Shown piece after piece: positions 50,354 to 64,000 of a stretch of DNA of 64,000 bases. Each line of letters begins with the position of its first letter. The stretch's first letter is position 1. A program made the position numbers and the translations under genes. The notes under the pieces were generated by a model. The model saw nothing but the letters and a program-made list of their open reading frames with translations, did not search any database and was not told the origin of the DNA. Source of the DNA: Ylistrum balloti (lineage: Eukaryota); the NCBI RefSeq assembly GCF_031769215.1, contig NW_026782193.1, positions 1,054,001 through 1,118,000 of the forward strand, written 5' to 3'.

Positions 50354-52448
50354 ATATTTTCAAGAAGATAACTTGTGATCAGGATAGAGTCCAGCTACAA
50401 CATGACTTAACATCACTTCAAAACTGGTCGGACAAATGGCTATTGCGATACCACCTAGATAAATGTGTTGTGTTAACAGTTGGTAAAGACACAATTAACG
50501 GTACACCTGTGTATTTCCTGAGTTCTGGTGATGAGACGCATTATCTACGCCAAGTTGATAGAGAAACAGACTTAGGAGTAACCATTGACTCCAACTTATC
50601 GTTTGAACATCACATACAGGAGAAAAAAGAAAAGATAGACTGCAGGCGGAAAATTACCGTCCTGTCAGCATTTTAAGCATCGTGTGACCTCCGCAATGGA
50701 CAACATCCATTGTGGGGTCCCCCAGGGTAGCTTACTGGGCCCTCTTTTATTTCTGATTTATGTAAATGACATGCGGATAAGTATAGACATTTCCTGTAAA
50801 CTACTTCTGTATGCTGATGACAGTGCAAATATTTTTTCACATCACTGTCCCAAAACAATCTCTTCAAAATTATCCTTAGTTTTGGAATCATGTCATGATT
50901 GGCTTGTTGACAACAAACTATCATTACATTTAGGTAAAACAGAAAGTATTTTATTTGGACCAAAGAGAAAATTAGGACAAGTACCCGAGGGTGATTTCAA
51001 AATTTCATGTAACGGTCAAAACATTTTTTCGCAATCTTCAGTAAAATACCTCGGTGTTACGATAGATGAATTTCTATCTGGAGAGGAAATTGTCTCCAAC
51101 ATTATCCACAAAATCAACCAAAGACTTAAATTTTTGTACAGAAATAGTAAATGTCTATCTCTAAAATCTCGAAAAACTTTATGTTCTGCTCTGATTCAGT
51201 GCCACTTTGATTATGCGTGCACCTCCTGGTATGAAGGAATTACTCAGAAACTCAAAGGTATACTCCAGACTACCCAAAACAAAATGGTCCGCTTTATTCT
51301 TAACCTTGATAACAGAACAAGGATCACTCTCACTGAATTAGAAAAACTAGGCATGCTAAATGTAGAAAGGAGGGTCCGTCAACTTCGCCTCAACCATACT
51401 TTTAACATCTATAATGGTAAATGTCCACAATATTTATATGAACTTTTCTCTCTAAACAAAAACTGTTGTGGTACTAGATCTGGAACGATGAACTTCTCAA
51501 TAAAAAACGTTAAAAGCATAGAAAGTTCTTCCTTTTCTACTTCGGCCGCAAAAGATTGGAATTCCCTTCCAGAAAATATTAAAAATTCTAAAAATAAATA
51601 TCATTTTAAAAACAAAGTAAAACAATTTCTGATGCTACAATCAAAAGGCGAATTTGACAACCCCTTCGTCTACTGTTGAGCTCAACCTCCACTTCTTTGC
51701 GTCTGGTTGAACGGGTAGTGATGTTATATTATTGTTCATATTATGTTATATTATTGTTCATGTTATATTATTATGTAATACCTCTTCAAATCCCATCCTT
51801 TTTCATAAATGCCCTGAAATGTGCCAAAACATTTTATTCACTTTCAGTATTTGTTTTCATATCTTCTATGTAAATGTAATTTTCTTTCAAATGTAGTGCT
51901 CTGTTTCATTTATAGTTAATGAAAATTAGATAAAGAAAATTAATTCAATCTCATTTCCATGGCTTTACATCTCAACCGGAAGGATTACACCTTAAATGGA
52001 CCCCATTGGAAATAAGCCTATTTTATAGGCTTTATGGGTAATCCAAGGCCAAAGGCATTTTCATCTGGTTTTATCAAATTTCTCTCTTTTTTATTTATAT
52101 TTCTAAATTTTCAACTATTTTACTTAAAAGATTTGCAAGCAGAGTGAAATTTAATTTCTGCGATACTAGTTTAAATTGTGATATTGTAAGGTATGTGAAA
52201 TACTTCTGTGATATCTTATATTTTATAATTAATAATTTTAAGAAATCCACAATAATTTATTACTGATTTTAATTGTTATGGAATTGCTTATGTAATATTT
52301 GTAATGTGCAATTTTATTATGCCTTTGACTGAATAAACAAATAAAAAAAAAATAAAAATAAAAATTAATAAAGCTAACAATGTTATGGGACTCATTAGAA
52401 GAACTTTCACATATCTGGATAATGACAACTTTATTCTTTTATACAAAT
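50354..52448 (+). mobile_element. CR1-clade LINE RT fragment split in two (50354-~50626 and ~52361-52448) by a younger insertion
   Basis: The left piece encodes LQHDLTSLQNWSDKWLL...DKC...ETDLGVTIDSNLSFEHHIQEK; the right piece resumes INKANNVMGLIRRTFTYLDNDNFILLYK, the expected continuation. Confidence 0.85.
50627..52360 (+). mobile_element. 5'-truncated L2/Crack-like LINE with an internal RT deletion, 3' UTR, AATAAA and A-rich tail, nested in the CR1 fragment
   Basis: ORF 50684..51679 has CGVPQGSLLGP, LYADD, LSLHLGKT, KYLGV and HFDYAC. An upstream AENYRPVSILS motif at ~50645-50680 abuts it directly. AATAAA at 52332 is followed by an A-rich tail. Confidence 0.85.
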
Positions 52449-54100: not shown

Positions 54101-56986
54101 ATGAGAAGTATGAACACTTTAGCGTTACTTCTGTTAGCGGTCCTCGCTATAAGTAAAACGATATCTGCTGACAATGATGACAACAAGAAGAAGGTAAGGT
54201 CCTAATATTGTGTAGGATGGAGACTAGCTTCCGTTCATTATACTGTAAAGTACAAGTGGTTATTTTATAAGCAGTTGTATGTAAAAGTGTTAATATGTAA
54301 ATGCAACTGTGAAAATTGACAAATGCTGTAATTTGCTTGAACTTTTGAATTATAATGTTGAAATGGTATACTTGTGGAAAAAGGGATTTCTGAGTGGAAT
54401 TTAGTGGTATATATGCAGCATTTACCTAATATTTTTTCCCCGATAGATAAAGAACACAGTCACAGAAGAGGTATGGTTTGATGTGGCGGTAGAAGACGGC
54501 GACGAAGTTACGTTTCAAGGACGATTCGTCGTCGCTCTTTTCGGTGACATTGCACCTATGACAGTAATGAACTTTCAGAGCATTGTTCGGGGGTACAAGC
54601 GAGGTAAGAAGGTAAGCATATGATTTCCTAATTTTTTTTCGTTATCATCACTCTTAATTTTAAACGAGGTTGTCAACATTCTCCGACACAAAGTTAACTC
54701 ACTAAAAACATTTCAGTCAGATAGCCTGCGTCGCGACTCAGAAATTTCTGTCTCGTCTAAGTGAAGACTTAGGGTAATGTAAAATGAAAGTTTACAAGGT
54801 AAATTAAATTAATATTACTAAATAGGCTATATGATACCGGGACTTTTTCTCAAACGTGGAGATGCTGATTACACGTGGCAGTTCAGACCTCGTGGTTAAT
54901 TCAGTTCACTATAAAGCAACGGTCAATACATTGTTATCGAGTCGGATGCCACTCGGTGGCAACATCTGTTGCGCCACGTAGAATCAATTGACTAAAAACT
55001 AATAGACAGCTATTTTCTTTTGTGTATGTGTGTATTTGTCTTCCTGCAGTTGAGCTTTGTAGTTTTGATTTATTTAAGCATTCCATTGGAGTGAAACATG
55101 AATCTCTGAAGATGCTTTTCAGCACACACGTTTTGATTTTAAAGTGGAGTGATATTGTATATCATATCCCAATTGAGTATTCCAACATAACCACATTAAT
55201 GTAAACAAAACAGTGTTCATTAATTATAAATATGCACCAGGAATGAATGCGGAAATTTTCGAATGTCGACTATTTTTGTTGTATGTAGCATCTCGTTTTA
55301 ATCTGATTGAACTTGAAGCATTTTCTGCCGATTGAAATAGTTGACACCAGGATGTGTCGTACACGACTATCTTGTCAATTAGGAAATAGTTTCCATATCA
55401 ACACAGCTTTTTTTTAAATATACATTTTCAGATGAATATTCATCTATTGAAATAGTATCGTTGGTGATTTCCTCAAAAGTTATCTTGCAACTTGCAGTGT
55501 TTAAAACAAGTTTATGAAGATAATTTTTCAAAACGGGGATGGCCGGGGATGTATGTGTTTTACGCCTGGCTTAAATCCGTTCTTGTGCGTGGATTAGACT
55601 TTGGGACTGTGCATTGGCTAGTTGCAAGTCTCCCTTTAATGTCTGCCTGGCTTGAGACCGGAAGGTCCCTTGTTCGAATCCCACAGGAGACAGAACAAAT
55701 TTTTCATTATTTATTTCGTGTTGTTGACCACTATAGATTGAGAAGATATATATTTTTTGAAGGACACTGCCGAATGTAGAAGTCATAAGTTGATTTCTTT
55801 GAAATTGGTTTTGGCTTTATCATACAACCACTTCCAGATAACAGGAATTGGAGAAAATCACAATCACACATAGCACGAGAAGTATAAAATTTCTGGCAGA
55901 ATTAGGTACCAACTTCTCGGAAAGATATATTGTTTAACTATAAATTTCGTATTGAATTCCCCCGATTGATCTTCCACTTTTATGGGAAATGATTCAACTT
56001 TTTTTTAAAATCTTCTTCAGAATCTTCATTACAAGAATTCCCCAATACATAGGATCGTACCCGATTTCATCATACAGATGGGTGACGTCACAGAAGGAGA
56101 TGGAACTGGAGGTATGATGCCAACAGTTTTGCAAACTGTGGACAAATTCTTTACTGTGTTGCCTTTCGTAATATTATCGCAGTTTCCTAAATACATGTAC
56201 CTTCTACAGTTATTTCTAGCAAAATATTTTCTAAGGTCTCTATTAAAATGTATAGTAGTATATGGATTAAAGAAAGATTTAGTGTCAACATTTAAAATCA
56301 TCATTACGTTGAAATATTAAATATGTTGTATTTTCAAACAAAAAATCAGCATGTTTTGTATCATTTATATATTCAATTCACAGGTGCCAGTATTTATGGA
56401 GATAAATTTGTTGACGAGACATTTGAAATATCCCACAAAGCAGCTGGCTACGTTTCCATGGCAAATCATGGTCCTGATACCAATGGATCCCAGTTCTTCA
56501 TCCTGTTGACCAAGGCCAGGTGGCTAGATGGCAAGCACGTGGCTTTTGGAAAAGTCATCAGAGGAATGGTAAGCACTTATTTTCTATTGCATCTCCTTAA
56601 AATAAACTACATACACACACCCACACATATAAATGTATGTATATATAATATATTGTAATAAACATTCAATTACATTTTAAGAGATAAAGTATTTTATTTG
56701 TAGATTTATCAAATACACTGTATAATTTAAATAACTGTATCTTATGGCTGATAAGCCCACACAATTTATGTGGTTTCATGAATTTCTTATTATTTACAAC
56801 AAATGCTTCAATACAAATGCTATTATGGTTTTACAGGACATTGTTAAAGAAATTGGCGAAGTCCCTGCTAGCAGTGTCAATGCAATTCCTAAAAAGAAGG
56901 TCTCCATAAAAGATTGTGGGGTTGTCGGAATTGAAAAGAAGTATGAATTAACAGCTCAACAAATGGAATCTGATGAAGATATGTAA
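54101..56986 (+). CDS. PPIB: Secretory-pathway cyclophilin (peptidyl-prolyl cis-trans isomerase B/C-like), 5 coding exons, 227 aa
   Basis: Exons 54101-54193, 54447-54611, 56021-56111, 56384-56568, 56837-56986 (684 nt, phases consistent). Signal peptide [23 protein letters not shown]; motifs [52 protein letters not shown]. An acceptor just before the ATG suggests a non-coding first exon (possible donor at ~53698). Orthology to PPIB versus a mollusc-specific paralogue is not resolved. Confidence 0.9.
55605..55700 (+). mobile_element. tRNA-derived SINE head remnant in cyclophilin intron 2
   Basis: A-box-like TGGCTAGTTGC (55615) and B-box GTTCGAATCC (55672) at tRNA-like spacing; no intact cloverleaf. 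Confidence 0.45.
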
Positions 56987-59804: not shown

Positions 59805-60492
59805 TGTAACAAAATGACTGAACGTGGTGTTTACTTGGGTTGACCGAAACGTTTATTTCATAGTATAGTGGTTTTCCATAGTTAGTACTTCGCGCTAATA
59901 TCCATTACAAAAGATAGTTCCTAATCAACATACAGCAGCATGTCGTGGCACCAAAAATAAATACCTGTGTAAGGCAGACAAAAACTAAACACCTGCCCGT
60001 CCATATCAAAGAGTTCCATACAAATGTCCATGGGCCAACTTGGCCAGGGCCTGCTCCATCGCGGAGCAGGTCCCATACGGGACTCTGCCCGTCTCCACGT
60101 CCGACTACCAACTCTCTCTAGCTACTCGATCCCAGACTCGATTAACTTCTGGCTATTGTCTTAGAATAAATAATACCCAAATACCTAATTTCAGCCTAGT
60201 CCCTATTGGACAACAATAACCCAACCCACGGACCATCTAATTATGAAGGCATGTGCGACTAGGAGTACCCGTTATCAACTGTAGTTCCTACTGTAATTAA
60301 CATACAAATACATTCGCCAGCGCGAGACATACAAAAGAGGGCATCTATCTGTCCTGATCAATCATACTGGCGATATTCTGCCACGGTGCTTCAACACTGC
60401 GGTACACATCCCGCCTGTTATCAGGCGTGCATCACTACCTGTCACTCACGGGATTTTTTCCTCGGTCCAGCATTGACTGACTTTTGACCTCA
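59805..60492 (-). mobile_element. CpG-rich repeat-like insert, possibly a solo LTR or DIRS-type terminal region
   Basis: Abrupt GC/CpG rise, hairpins (CCTGCTCC-ATCGC-GGAGCAGG; GTCCC-ATAC-GGGAC), minus-strand AATAAA ~60 nt before a TTGTTACA end. No TSD found. Confidence 0.35.
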
Positions 60493-60614
60493 TGTACTTT
60501 AAACTAAGACGCTGCTCTCTACGATACACACCATTCCAAAGTTATCATTAAACCTATTTTTTACTTATTTTGTTACAAGTGCTTGAAAAACAGGAAACCA
60601 AGACCAAACAAACA

Positions 60615-62315
60615 TCACAAATTGCTGTATTTACTCTTAAGGTATTCATCTGCATCATTTAAAACTGCCTGCAGGTCTTTATATTGTGTGATGAGTTCAT
60701 TTGCCTCTTGCACTTTTAACCACTTAAAGTCAATGTGTTCATCAGACAGAGTAACAGCCATCTCAGGATCTTTCATTTTTGCCAGCCAGTATACAACCCT
60801 TTTCGGTCTTCCATTCACGGGATAATTCAATGTTTTTTTGAAATTGTCTATGACCTCCAGATGGGATCTGTTCAGTCCTGCCTCCTCTGTTGTTTCCCTC
60901 AATGCAGTGTCAAACTCAGACTCTCCAGGGTCAACGTGACCTGTTATAAGATGTACCAGATGTATGAAAATTAACTGAATGACACTACTCTGAAAAAATT
61001 TCATTAAACAAATTTCAAACAAATATATTCTTTTTACTGTGACAGACACAAATCAATCAGAAGTGGTTTACCAGTTATGGTGATAGGATGCTGTGACTGA
61101 ATTGAAATTCAATAATAAAGAGACGCACTACAGTTTGACCCACAGAAGCAGAGTGATTTGTGGGATATGGCTATGTAAGTAACTTTGCATGCCAATGGAT
61201 CTCTAGTCATAATTAATTTTCCACTTCATACAAAAAAAACACAAACCCATCATCATCACTACAAACATCCTACAATTCAAACAAGGAATAGTAACTCTTT
61301 GTGCATTCACCATATGATTTCAGTTAAATCCATCCATACCTGGAATTTGTCCATTTCCATGAGACATGTTTTATATAGTCACAGGCATTGTGAAGAAAAA
61401 CAGAAAATTGTAGGGAAATTACATCTATGTCTTTTTCTGTGATCATTATTATTTGGGTAGCCAAACTTGCAGGGGCCATTAGGGAGTTTCAAAATTCTGA
61501 CTTGTTAAAAATTACATGTTTATATGCAATTAGTAACAACTTTTTTAGTTTTTTGAATATTGAGTATTGAATAACTTTCAGCAAATGAACATCATTGGAT
61601 TTTCATACATTTGATATAAGAAGTCTAAATGACATTTATACTGCTTTTTTATTGGTATTGAATGCCAACTAATATCATTAATAACTTATTAAGCTTGTCT
61701 AAAGATTGGTCTGATCATCAAGCTAAAACAGATGGATGTAATTAAAGGTATAACAATGATGACATGGAATAAATATGGAGGATATAAATGTCGGCTGAAT
61801 AGGCAAGCTAAGTAAGGTCACTTGCAACTCTTTCTGAAATATTAACCTATAATAAAAACCAAGTAAAATTCACAATCTACTATATAAACGTCTTTGGTAT
61901 AATAATCATACAACATTGTATTTGTATAAAGTGGACAGATTTTTTTTGTTTTTTGTTTTTTTACACATGTGACTCAATTCTTGAACATTGTATCAGAGTG
62001 CAGCAAAAATGGCTTCTAAGCTAATTAATCAATGGTATATTTCAGAATGACTCTGCATTTGAGTAACTAATTGATTACTCAAAACTATCTTTCAAATGTG
62101 TCCAACCTGTTCAAAGTTTACTATCGAGATACAAGTGTCTGTTACATTAGTCTCATGATTAATGCATCTTCTCAAATGCAGGCAACATTTAATCAACCTT
62201 TTGGTGGCGTCCAGTGGTGTTGACCATATGATGTTTGCAGCAGTAAGTACTGTATTTCAGATGATATTGTCCGAAAAACAATAAATCCGGCTGCAACAAC
62301 CTCCTTTCCTGCCAT
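60615..62315 (-). CDS. NUDT2: Bis(5'-nucleosyl)-tetraphosphatase [asymmetrical], Ap4A hydrolase; coding exons 62198-62315 and 60615-60940; 147 aa
   Basis: MAGKEVVAAGFIVFR...QYLLLQTSYGQHHWTPPK|G HVDPGESEFDTALRETTEEAG (intact Nudix box GX5EX7REUXEEXG) ...PKRVVYWLA...LSDEH..FKW. The phase-1 intron falls in the KG codon; the length equals recalled human NUDT2. Confidence 0.95.
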
Positions 62316-62739
62316 CTTAAATACGGAATTTCTCTAATTCACAAATGACTATCGGTTACGTTCTGAGGAGTCTCGAATGATATCTGTCTCATATTAGTTT
62401 TGGAATCCAACACAGAATAGAGATAGAAAAACTCCGGATAATTAATTTCAAATATTTCCCTTAATCAAATACACATCAAATTACACACAGTAATAAGTCA
62501 GTTTTACAGGAAAAAGGAATTAGTACACAACATAATGTGAAACCATTAAACAGTTCTTATAAAAGAAATTCTTTTATATTATCCAAGTTGCACATTACTC
62601 GATGGATCGTTCTCATTTTCATGTTAGATCCAATATAAGCTACTTTAGAAATTAATATATCATTTAATTCTCGACCATTAACAACAATGAGTAATACAAC
62701 CGCTATTTACAGATTTAAACAAAAATAATTCGACAATGC

Positions 62740-62840
62740 CTCGGTGATTTTTTATCCGGAATATTCTATCCGGTATTTCCAAATTAGAAAATGCCTTGCC
62801 GACCTGTCGCGTCGGAAAATGGCGGCCGTATGAAAAACAT
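62740..62840. promoter_or_regulatory. Bidirectional promoter between NUDT2 and the KIF24-like gene
   Basis: CpG-rich patch with CCGGAA/TCCGG ETS-like sites and the YY1 motif AAAATGGCGG (62816-62825). Both flanking ATGs are preceded by splice acceptors, implying 5' UTR exons that start here. Confidence 0.6.
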
Positions 62841-63876
62841 TAGCTCCCCTGTGTAGAATGTATAGACACTAAAATATTCATGAAACAGCTGTCACCACAA
62901 GCTTTCACCTAGGTGGTATTTTAAGTCCTCTTCTTAAAGATGGATATTGTCGTGGCGTCCGGAGTTACTTTCATTTTTGGAATGCATAATTAAGGTGAAT
63001 ATACAATATTCTCTTAAAGATTTTTTTTTCAATTTTGTTGCTAAGGCCGCCAAAACATTCAATACATTATCATAGGATCTTATAGATATGATGATGAAAC
63101 TGCAATAACCACTTTTGTGACATTTTTGTTTTGTCCAAATTCAAAACGCACCATTTTGACTCATGAACTTTAAATTGTCGTCCAATGATTCTTAAACTTC
63201 TGTGACATGTTGAGACAGGCAACATCTCGAAACGCTACAGGAAGTCTCGAACACATTGTGCTTTTATTCAGGTTATCAAGATGAACTTTGTTCCAAGATA
63301 TTTGACTCATTCACTTGATATGTGACTATTATTTACTTGAAAAGGGTTAGTATATTTCTATGTATTTCACATTGAAGATACAATATCATTGAAGTTGATG
63401 CAAGAAAATCAATCTACTGAATCCTGTTGTAACTCCATTCTCAGAAAGTAATTGACTTTAGTTCTTTTAATTATGATAAGTCACATGTGAACTAACTTTG
63501 ATTTGACTTGTTTTACTGGTATTGTAAGACTACAATACCTAGAAGGTACATATAGAGTACTTACAGTCTTAAACAAGATCAAATGGTAAATCTTCAGACA
63601 CAAACCATTTTGTTATAGTTGTCATCTTTTCAAAACAAATTCACTACACTGTTATAGATTATTTAGAGTTATGTGAAGTTTACATTCCTTTTTGTAAAAT
63701 CTTTTTGAACATTTTCAGAAGATGACAACATCGCTGACATAGCATTACAGTCCCTGGTTTGCCAATGATTTTCGTAATCTCATCAAGTAACTCATTTCTG
63801 TATGGTTGTTTGCATTGCTATTTTTTTGTTTGTTTTGTTTTTAGGTCAAACATCAGGCTGTGATATCTTTAAGAAC

Positions 63877-64000
63877 ATGGGGACTTTATTTGAGTGTCTT
63901 CGTGAAGCACGTCTTGAGAAATACTATCCAACTCTACGAGTAAATGGGATCACAAAATCTGAATCACTGGCAAAACTCACCCTAGAAGACTGTGAAGCTA
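63877..64000 (+). CDS. KIF24: N-terminal SAM-like domain of a KIF24-like kinesin-13 gene (partial, runs off the right edge)
   Basis: MGTLFECLREARLEKYYPTLRVNGITKSESLAKLTLEDCEA aligns with the recalled human KIF24 start MASWLYECLCEAELAQYYSHFTALGLQKIDELAKITMKDY. Acceptor ttttttag at 63844 precedes it. The head-to-head position next to NUDT2 matches human. Only 41 codons are visible, so another SAM protein cannot be excluded. Confidence 0.75.
   Translation, partial: MGTLFECLREARLEKYYPTLRVNGITKSESLAKLTLEDCEA

What the first reader, a model, noticed from the sequence alone, without database searches (positions are those of the whole stretch)
62198..64000. NUDT2-KIF24 head-to-head pair apparently conserved between a mollusc-like genome and human
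Seen: NUDT2 (minus) and a gene starting with a KIF24-like SAM sequence (plus) diverge from one ~100-bp CpG patch with ETS-like and YY1 motifs. Both ATGs sit behind 5' UTR introns, and the plus-strand leader has a minimal uORF ATG GCG GCC GTA TGA (62819-62833). Established from recall: human NUDT2 and KIF24 are divergently transcribed neighbours a few hundred bp apart at 9p13.3. Inference: a bidirectional promoter retained since the protostome-deuterostome split, linking Ap4A/cap metabolism with a centriolar, cilium-disassembly kinesin; such ancient pairs are rare and imply regulatory constraint.
Basis: partly seen in the sequence, partly recalled or inferred. Interest (0 to 1): 0.7.

Follow-up and report, generated by a model that had tools for sequence, protein, structure and literature searches.

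The report
Ancient NUDT2–KIF24 head-to-head gene pair
A scallop keeps two unrelated genes, NUDT2 and the cilium-control kinesin KIF24, back to back as in amphioxus, an acorn worm and human, but several other invertebrates, including a related scallop, have split them, so this is a good example of a known kind of ancient gene neighbourhood and not a new phenomenon.

Summary
The window is Ylistrum balloti (saucer scallop). NUDT2 (Ap4A hydrolase, 147 aa, two coding exons) lies on the minus strand. On the plus strand, 1,561 bp from its ATG, starts a 1,421-aa protein with an N-terminal SAM domain and a kinesin-13 motor, i.e. a KIF24 orthologue.

The same divergent arrangement occurs in Branchiostoma floridae and Ptychodera flava. 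Human NUDT2–KIF24 is catalogued with TSSs 238 bp apart. The genes are also adjacent, in other orientations, in a sea star and a coral. The neighbourhood is therefore probably pre-bilaterian and retained here.

It is not tightly constrained. The pair is split in Pecten maximus (same family, about 33.6 Mb apart on one chromosome), Mya, Lineus, Owenia and Batillaria.

The CpG/ETS/YY1 patch is real. It is 88% conserved with Pecten, where it stays with KIF24, so it is at least KIF24's core promoter. Whether it also drives NUDT2 is untested, because no RNA run was available. The "uORF" is the ATG of the YY1 motif.

Verdict: a new member of a known kind (conserved ancestral head-to-head pairs; nearly 600 ancient pairs are described), of modest interest.

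The parts
60615..60940 (-). NUDT2 last coding exon (Nudix box GHVDPGESEFDTALRETTEEAGL; stop at 60617-60615)
60941..62197 (-). NUDT2 intron (phase 1, GT..AG). The same split near residue 40 is seen in amphioxus and the sea star.
62198..62315 (-). NUDT2 first coding exon (MAGKEVV...HHWTPPK + G)
62316..62753 (.). Stretch between the NUDT2 ATG and the promoter patch. It has no detectable similarity to Pecten upstream of either gene. It is presumed to hold the NUDT2 leader/intron, and the Pecten breakpoint maps somewhere inside it.
62754..62846 (+). Conserved CpG-rich core-promoter block (88% identical to Pecten KIF24 upstream). ETS core CCGGAA at 62756-62761; YY1 motif at 62816-62826; 4-codon ATG..TGA at 62819-62833.
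62870..62994 (+). Presumed rest of non-coding KIF24 exon 1 (conserved block 62870-62905, 89%). It ends at the conserved donor AAG|GTGAAT (GT at 62995-62996).
   Evidence: inference, no RNA
63150..63345 (+). Second strongly conserved non-coding block (79-89%). It holds a CCAAT box (~63190), CAGGAAGT (~63238) and a 14-codon uORF/hairpin at 63281-63325, and ends at donor GG|GTTAGT (GT at 63346-63347). It is either an internal leader exon or an alternative first exon with its own promoter.
63845..64000 (+). KIF24 first coding exon. It follows a polypyrimidine tract plus AG at 63843-63844, and the ATG is at 63877. It encodes the SAM domain and continues beyond the window to about residue 263.

Best explanation
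The end of the window carries a genuine divergent gene pair in the scallop Ylistrum balloti. NUDT2 (asymmetrical Ap4A hydrolase) is on the minus strand. The KIF24 orthologue (N-terminal SAM, kinesin-13 microtubule-depolymerising motor) is on the plus strand. Their ATGs are 1,561 bp apart.

This is the ancestral layout. The same <-NUDT2 KIF24-> order is present in amphioxus, an acorn worm and human, and the two genes are still neighbours in a sea star and a coral. The adjacency therefore most likely predates Bilateria and has simply never been broken in this scallop's lineage.

A short CpG-rich block (62754-62846) carries ETS cores and a sense-strand YY1 motif and is under purifying selection. 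It is the KIF24 core promoter. Transcription probably starts just upstream of the YY1 site, runs through a non-coding exon to a donor at 62994|62995, and reaches the coding exon at 63845, possibly via a second conserved leader exon. NUDT2 probably starts on the other strand within a few hundred bp of the same block. That would make the pair a bidirectional-promoter pair by the usual criterion of less than 1 kb between TSSs.

Shown: gene identities, layout, cross-phylum synteny, and conservation of the promoter blocks.
Inferred: TSS positions, leader exons, and any sharing of the promoter.

The linkage is not obligatory. Five other protostome lineages have separated the genes.
For: Gene identities.

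Layout and contiguity.

Synteny:
- Branchiostoma floridae: NUDT2(-)/KIF24(+), 2,122 bp between ATGs, with UBAP1 downstream of KIF24, as in the human order UBAP1-KIF24-NUDT2.
- Ptychodera flava: divergent, about 9.6 kb.
- Patiria miniata: adjacent in tandem, 2.9 kb.
- Oculina patagonica: adjacent and convergent, 2.6 kb.
- Human: inter-TSS distance 238 bp.

Promoter:
- CpG statistics and a unique YY1 match.
- 88-89% identity of the blocks against 46-54% background in the Pecten comparison.
- A YY1 core on the KIF24-sense strand within 2 kb of the KIF24 ATG in five of nine loci, against a background of 13 hits in 334 kb.
- Amphioxus shows the same geometry: YY1, then about 150 nt, then a GTAAGT donor.
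Against: No RNA-seq or CAGE run was available, so no TSS, leader exon or co-expression is demonstrated.

In Pecten maximus the conserved patch stays with KIF24, while NUDT2 lies about 33.6 Mb away with no recognisable copy of it. The patch is therefore not demonstrably NUDT2's promoter.

The pair is absent within 10 kb in Mya, Lineus and Owenia, and lies on different contigs in Batillaria.

In Xenopus laevis no NUDT2 lies within 10 kb upstream of the KIF24 CDS. This is inconclusive because of UTR introns. The human pair is also not in that study's vertebrate-conserved list.

Only one species was sampled per phylum, and flanks were limited to 10 kb.
Confidence: 0.8

Rival explanations
1. Neutral relic. 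The adjacency is ancestral but is kept only because no rearrangement has yet hit a 1.5-kb target in a slowly rearranging genome. The two genes have independent promoters and there is no selective coupling.
For: The pair is split in Pecten, Mya, Lineus, Owenia and Batillaria with both genes retained. Orientation has changed in Patiria and Oculina, which destroys any bidirectional promoter while keeping the genes adjacent. The conserved patch travels with KIF24 alone in Pecten.
Against: Adjacency survives in at least six widely separated lineages: coral, sea star, hemichordate, amphioxus, mammal and scallop. Irimia et al. 2012 treat this pattern as beyond neutral expectation. Head-to-head orientation with a short spacer is the class they found enriched among conserved pairs.
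Confidence: 0.35
2. Convergent re-association. The pair was lost early in protostomes, and NUDT2 landed next to KIF24 again in the Ylistrum lineage by chance.
For: Only 1 of 6 protostome lineages sampled has the pair, and the closest relative sampled (Pecten) lacks it.
Against: Re-creating the exact neighbour, side and orientation among about 20,000 or more genes is very improbable, whereas independent losses are routine. In Pecten and Mya both genes remain on one chromosome, as expected after intrachromosomal breaks of an old linkage. The NUDT2 intron position is ancestral (shared with amphioxus and the sea star), so the gene is not a retrocopy.
Confidence: 0.04
3. Assembly or annotation artefact joining two unlinked genes.
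For: None found.
Against: There are no N between the genes. An independent DNA run has a single 5.4-kb contig spanning NUDT2 exon 1, the spacer and KIF24 exon 1 with 12 substitutions.
Confidence: 0.01

Closest known systems
Human NUDT2-KIF24 divergently paired genes (9p13.3), PMC12672016 Table S1A
   Same: The same two orthologues in the same 5'-5' orientation. The human inter-TSS distance is 238 bp, and the gene order UBAP1-KIF24-NUDT2 matches amphioxus.
   Different: In the scallop the TSSs are unknown and the ATGs are 1,561 bp apart. That study does not list the human pair among its vertebrate-conserved pairs or its pairs conserved in fly, worm or yeast, so the deep conservation is not recorded there.
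Conserved ancestral microsyntenic pairs (CAMPs) of Irimia et al. 2012, e.g. HSPE1-HSPD1
   Same: Unrelated genes kept adjacent across phyla, predominantly 5'-5' with short spacers.
   Different: HSPE1-HSPD1 is kept in nearly all species with conserved orientation and proven co-expression. NUDT2-KIF24 is patchy, changes orientation in two phyla, and has no expression evidence here. Whether it is in their list could not be checked, because the supplement is not held.
YY1-type core promoters (motif AAGATGGCGGC just downstream of the TSS on the sense strand; own knowledge, Xi et al. 2007)
   Same: A sense-strand AAAATGGCGGC about 1 kb upstream of the KIF24 ATG. It is followed by a non-coding exon, is conserved in Pecten, and recurs in amphioxus, a coral and a nemertean.
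   Different: No binding or TSS data exist. The recurrence test was post hoc.

Membership tests
NUDT2 / asymmetrical Ap4A hydrolase (Nudix) | Nudix box GX5EX7REUXEEXGU within a protein of about 147 aa | tested here: met
   GHVDPGESEFDTALRETTEEAGL in exon 2. Pfam NUDIX 1.1e-13.
NUDT2 / asymmetrical Ap4A hydrolase (Nudix) | Closest solved relatives are animal Ap4A hydrolases, not other Nudix subfamilies | tested here: met
   Human NUDT2 3U53/1XSA/4ICK at E 1e-27, then C. elegans Ap4A hydrolase 1KT9. NCBI names the protein bis(5'-nucleosyl)-tetraphosphatase.
NUDT2 / asymmetrical Ap4A hydrolase (Nudix) | Ap4A hydrolysis activity | not testable with these tools
   Needs an enzyme assay.
KIF24 (kinesin-13 with SAM) | Kinesin-13 type motor domain, internal to the protein | tested here: met
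   Pfam Kinesin 5.8e-101 at residues 221-537 of the 1,421-aa product. The best PDB matches are KIF2C, Klp10A and KIF2A, about 135 bits above any other kinesin class.
KIF24 (kinesin-13 with SAM) | N-terminal SAM domain | tested here: inconclusive
   On the Ylistrum product the SAM families score just below Pfam cut-offs: SAM_TNK 19.9 against 25, SAM_2 18.2 against 20.5. SAM_2 passes in a sister scallop protein at 21.0. The 41-aa exon aligns end-to-end with the N-termini of named KIF24 of amphioxus and hemichordates, whose SAM_1 passes.
KIF24 (kinesin-13 with SAM) | Orthology to vertebrate KIF24 | tested here: met
   A profile of the mollusc, amphioxus and hemichordate proteins retrieves vertebrate KIF24 at about 800 bits, E about 1e-235.
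KIF24 (kinesin-13 with SAM) | Centriolar localisation and a role in cilium control | not testable with these tools
   Known for the human protein (quoted in PMC5048446). Untested in molluscs.
Bidirectional-promoter (divergently paired) genes | Opposite strands, 5' ends facing, no gene between | tested here: met
Bidirectional-promoter (divergently paired) genes | TSSs less than 1 kb apart | not testable with these tools
   No RNA run holds the stretch. The ATGs are 1,561 bp apart and the CpG patch is 440-520 bp from the NUDT2 ATG.
Bidirectional-promoter (divergently paired) genes | Shared regulatory sequence or co-expression | tested here: inconclusive
   The only conserved promoter blocks stay with KIF24 in Pecten, and none is found upstream of Pecten NUDT2.
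Conserved ancestral microsyntenic pair | Adjacency of the orthologues in several distant phyla | tested here: met
   Mollusca (Ylistrum), Cephalochordata, Hemichordata, Echinodermata and Cnidaria, plus mammals from the literature.
Conserved ancestral microsyntenic pair | Conserved orientation | tested here: inconclusive
   Divergent in four lineages, tandem in Patiria, convergent in Oculina.

The most novel reading that the evidence does not exclude
The NUDT2-KIF24 neighbourhood predates Bilateria and is kept by shared cis-regulation from a YY1/ETS bidirectional promoter. Under this reading Ap4A turnover and centriole/cilium control are co-expressed as one ancient unit, and the recent split in Pecten is a natural experiment that would show what uncoupling costs.
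Probability: 0.15. Interest if true: 0.55.

Novelty: new member of a known kind. Interest (0 to 1): 0.35.

Why it matters
The finding adds a well-documented case to the catalogue of ancient head-to-head gene pairs. The layout is traced across six phyla, the core-promoter block is defined, and two confamilial scallops differ in having the pair intact (Ylistrum) or split (Pecten). That contrast makes it directly testable whether such pairs are held together by shared regulation or are only slow-decaying relics. It does not reveal a new mechanism. No functional link between Ap4A metabolism and cilium disassembly is supported by anything found here.

Tried and rejected
RNA evidence. Laying that run confirmed contiguity but gave no transcript information.

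Joined NUDT2 model. The database protein P0001 served as the spliced product.

Literature.
- No paper discusses the pair as conserved.
- The Irimia 2012 and Li 2006 supplements are not held.
- Supplements of PMC8851819, PMC11175523 and PMC7817982 do not mention either gene.
- The apparent co-mention in PMC6753476 is a list entry and a NUDT21 match.

Synteny look-ups.
- The Stylophora KIF24 was not on record.
- Xenopus laevis was inconclusive within 10-kb flanks.

NUDT2 promoter. Sensitive blastn of 62317-62900 against 10 kb upstream of Pecten NUDT2 found nothing.

The conserved block 63150-63345 as an RNA gene. There was no Rfam match, and the consensus fold is weak, -21.5 kcal/mol over 230 nt with two sequences. 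This reading was rejected as unsupported.

The 14-codon uORF peptide. It was found only in Pecten and in none of seven other phyla's loci.

Searches not run. I ran no further search on more NUDT2 orthologues. It would have given only contig lengths, not adjacency.
Full report
**What is there**

The last 3.4 kb of the window carry two genes facing away from each other.

NUDT2 lies on the minus strand with two coding exons. The first runs 62315->62198 (MAGKEVV...HHWTPPK plus one base, donor G|GT). The second runs 60940->60618, with the stop at 60617-60615.
- The second exon contains a complete Nudix box, matches Pfam NUDIX (1.1e-13), and has human Ap4A hydrolase structures as its best solved relatives (3U53, E 1.7e-27).
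- A word-index protein search returned a 100%-identical 147-aa protein named bis(5'-nucleosyl)-tetraphosphatase [asymmetrical]-like from Ylistrum balloti.
- Fetching its locus gave DNA identical to the window over 11,301 bases. The window is therefore from the saucer scallop assembly GCA_031769215.1.
- The database protein maps at 100% to both exons.

The plus-strand gene has its ATG at 63877 and opens a 41-codon stretch to the window's end.
- On its own this stretch scores weakly for SAM families.
- An exhaustive HMMER search with the 41 residues found 26 proteins. The long ones are all matched at their extreme N-terminus. They include proteins that NCBI names KIF24 in Branchiostoma floridae, Ptychodera flava and Glandiceps, and kinesin-motor proteins of many molluscs.
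- The public gene model on the same contig starts at exactly window position 63877 and encodes 1,421 aa (P0072). It has SAM-like residues 4-55 and a kinesin motor at 221-537.
- The motor of a sister-scallop orthologue (P0036) matches KIF2C, Klp10A and KIF2A (kinesin-13) about 135 bits better than any other kinesin class.
- A profile of these proteins retrieves vertebrate KIF24 at about 800 bits.

**Spacer anatomy**

The ATGs are 1,561 bp apart.

The CpG patch.
- 62740-62835 has 9 CpG in 96 bp, observed/expected 1.87 against 0.42 for the window, in the top 0.5% of 96-bp windows.
- AAAATGGCGGC at 62816-62826 is the only match to the YY1 consensus in 64 kb, with 0.03 expected.
- A CCGGAA core lies at 62756-62761.
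The same ATG opens a different short ORF in amphioxus.

Comparison with Pecten maximus. This is informative because neutral DNA between the two scallops no longer aligns. Only the coding exons and a few blocks do. The blocks, with their identity to Pecten against a 46-54% background, are:
- 62754-62846: 88%.
- 62870-62905: 89%.
- A donor AAG|GTGAAT at 62994|62995.
- 63150-63345: 79-89%.

The block 63150-63345 has a CCAAT box and a CAGGAAGT site. It also holds a 14-codon ORF at 63281-63325 (MNFVPRYLTHSLDM; in Pecten MDFVPRYLTHSLDM, with two synonymous changes and TGA->TAA) enclosed in a hairpin. It ends in a good donor at 63345|63346. The coding exon is preceded by a long pyrimidine tract and an AG at 63843-63844.

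I infer that the KIF24 leader has one or two non-coding exons. No RNA run was available to confirm this. No Rfam family matches the region.

All of these conserved blocks lie upstream of the Pecten KIF24 gene. Nothing from 62317-62753 is found upstream of either Pecten gene.

**Is the pairing real?**

The spacer has no N. An independent DNA run contains one 5,452-bp contig covering 62054-64000 with 12 substitutions.

**Synteny survey**

The survey used 12 locus look-ups with 10-kb flanks. Nudix neighbours were checked by tblastn against scallop NUDT2.

Head-to-head:
- Ylistrum: 1,561 bp between ATGs.
- Branchiostoma floridae: 2,122 bp, with UBAP1 convergent downstream of KIF24.
- Ptychodera flava: about 9.6 kb.

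Adjacent in another orientation:
- Patiria miniata: KIF24-> NUDT2->, 2.9 kb apart.
- The coral Oculina patagonica: KIF24-> <-NUDT2, 2.6 kb apart, with an intronless NUDT2.

Not adjacent:
- Pecten maximus: NUDT2 at 5.15 Mb on the minus strand and KIF24 at 38.73 Mb on the plus strand of the same chromosome, with HSP70 upstream of KIF24.
- Mya arenaria: two tandem NUDT2 copies, with TAF1C upstream.
- Lineus longissimus: an OTU gene upstream of KIF24.
- Owenia fusiformis.
- Batillaria: different contigs.

Inconclusive: Xenopus laevis has UBAP1 downstream but no NUDT2 within 10 kb of the KIF24 CDS.

Human and other mammals, from the literature:
- NUDT2 TSS at 34,329,506 (+) and KIF24 TSS at 34,329,268 (-), 238 bp apart (PMC12672016 Table S1A).
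- Gene order UBAP1-KIF24-NUDT2 in human and in sheep (PMC5048446, PMC9179888).

No human sequence was fetched or compared.

**Interpretation**

The same side-and-strand arrangement in a mollusc, a cephalochordate, a hemichordate and mammals, plus adjacency in an echinoderm and a cnidarian, makes ancestral retention far more likely than re-association. Independent breaks are routine. Re-creating a specific neighbour in a specific orientation is not. In Pecten and Mya the genes remain on one chromosome, as expected after intrachromosomal breaks.

The further claim of regulatory constraint is weak.
- Five of six sampled protostome lineages have lost the pair, one of them within the same family.
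- Two phyla keep the genes adjacent in orientations that abolish a bidirectional promoter.
- When the pair splits in Pecten, the conserved CpG/ETS/YY1 block goes with KIF24.
- A YY1 core on the KIF24-sense strand recurs within 2 kb of the KIF24 ATG in Ylistrum, Pecten, amphioxus, Oculina and Lineus, against a background of 13 hits per 334 kb. This test is post hoc. Three of those five have no NUDT2 upstream. The motif therefore looks like an old feature of the KIF24 promoter, not of the pair.

**Novelty**

The phenomenon is well described. Irimia et al. 2012 report nearly 600 ancient unrelated gene pairs, and 54.8% of them are 5'-5' in humans. The human pair is catalogued, but not as vertebrate-conserved or invertebrate-conserved in the one study whose tables I could read. 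I found no paper noting its conservation outside vertebrates. The Irimia supplement could not be checked.

I therefore file this as a new member of a known kind. Its most useful aspect is the contrast between Ylistrum (pair intact) and Pecten (pair split).

Noticed in passing
window 63150-63345: A non-coding block as conserved with Pecten maximus as the coding exons (79-89%). It holds a CCAAT box, CAGGAAGT, and a 14-codon uORF at 63281-63325. The Pecten copy of the uORF differs by two synonymous changes, one N->D change (which keeps a G-U pair in a surrounding hairpin) and TGA->TAA. It may be a conserved-peptide uORF, a leader hairpin, or a second KIF24 promoter.
   Followed up: partly
window 62816-62826; L003 8353; L005 8899; L008 9770; L012 8133: A YY1 core (AA[AG]ATGGCG) on the KIF24-sense strand within 2 kb upstream of the KIF24 ATG in two scallops, amphioxus, a coral and a nemertean. 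Background is 13 hits in 334 kb on both strands. The test was post hoc. It suggests a very old YY1-type KIF24 promoter that does not depend on NUDT2.
   Followed up: partly
L002 and L005 (Pecten maximus LR736846.1): NUDT2 (minus strand, 5.15 Mb) and KIF24 (plus strand, 38.73 Mb) keep their relative orientation although they are about 33.6 Mb apart. One simple inversion cannot explain the split. HSP70 now faces KIF24.
   Followed up: no
L011 5108-11276 (Mya arenaria): Two tandem NUDT2-like genes (141 and 152 aa).
   Followed up: no
L008 24669-25130 (Oculina patagonica): The coral NUDT2 is intronless, whereas scallop, amphioxus and sea star share an intron near residue 40. It is convergent with KIF24.
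   Followed up: no
L003, L009, L010: UBAP1 lies convergent just downstream of KIF24 in amphioxus and Xenopus, matching the human order UBAP1-KIF24-NUDT2. This is a three-gene chordate block.
   Followed up: partly
window 60500-60616: Contig word depth of about 826 in the DNA run, against about 10 for the unique sequence. This is a high-copy repeat directly 3' of the NUDT2 stop. A GC-rich stretch (47% GC) lies at 60000-60499.
   Followed up: no
window 54101-56986 (+) and 50684-51679 (+): A cyclophilin-type PPIase gene (227 aa model) convergent with NUDT2, and a reverse-transcriptase fragment further upstream.
   Followed up: partly
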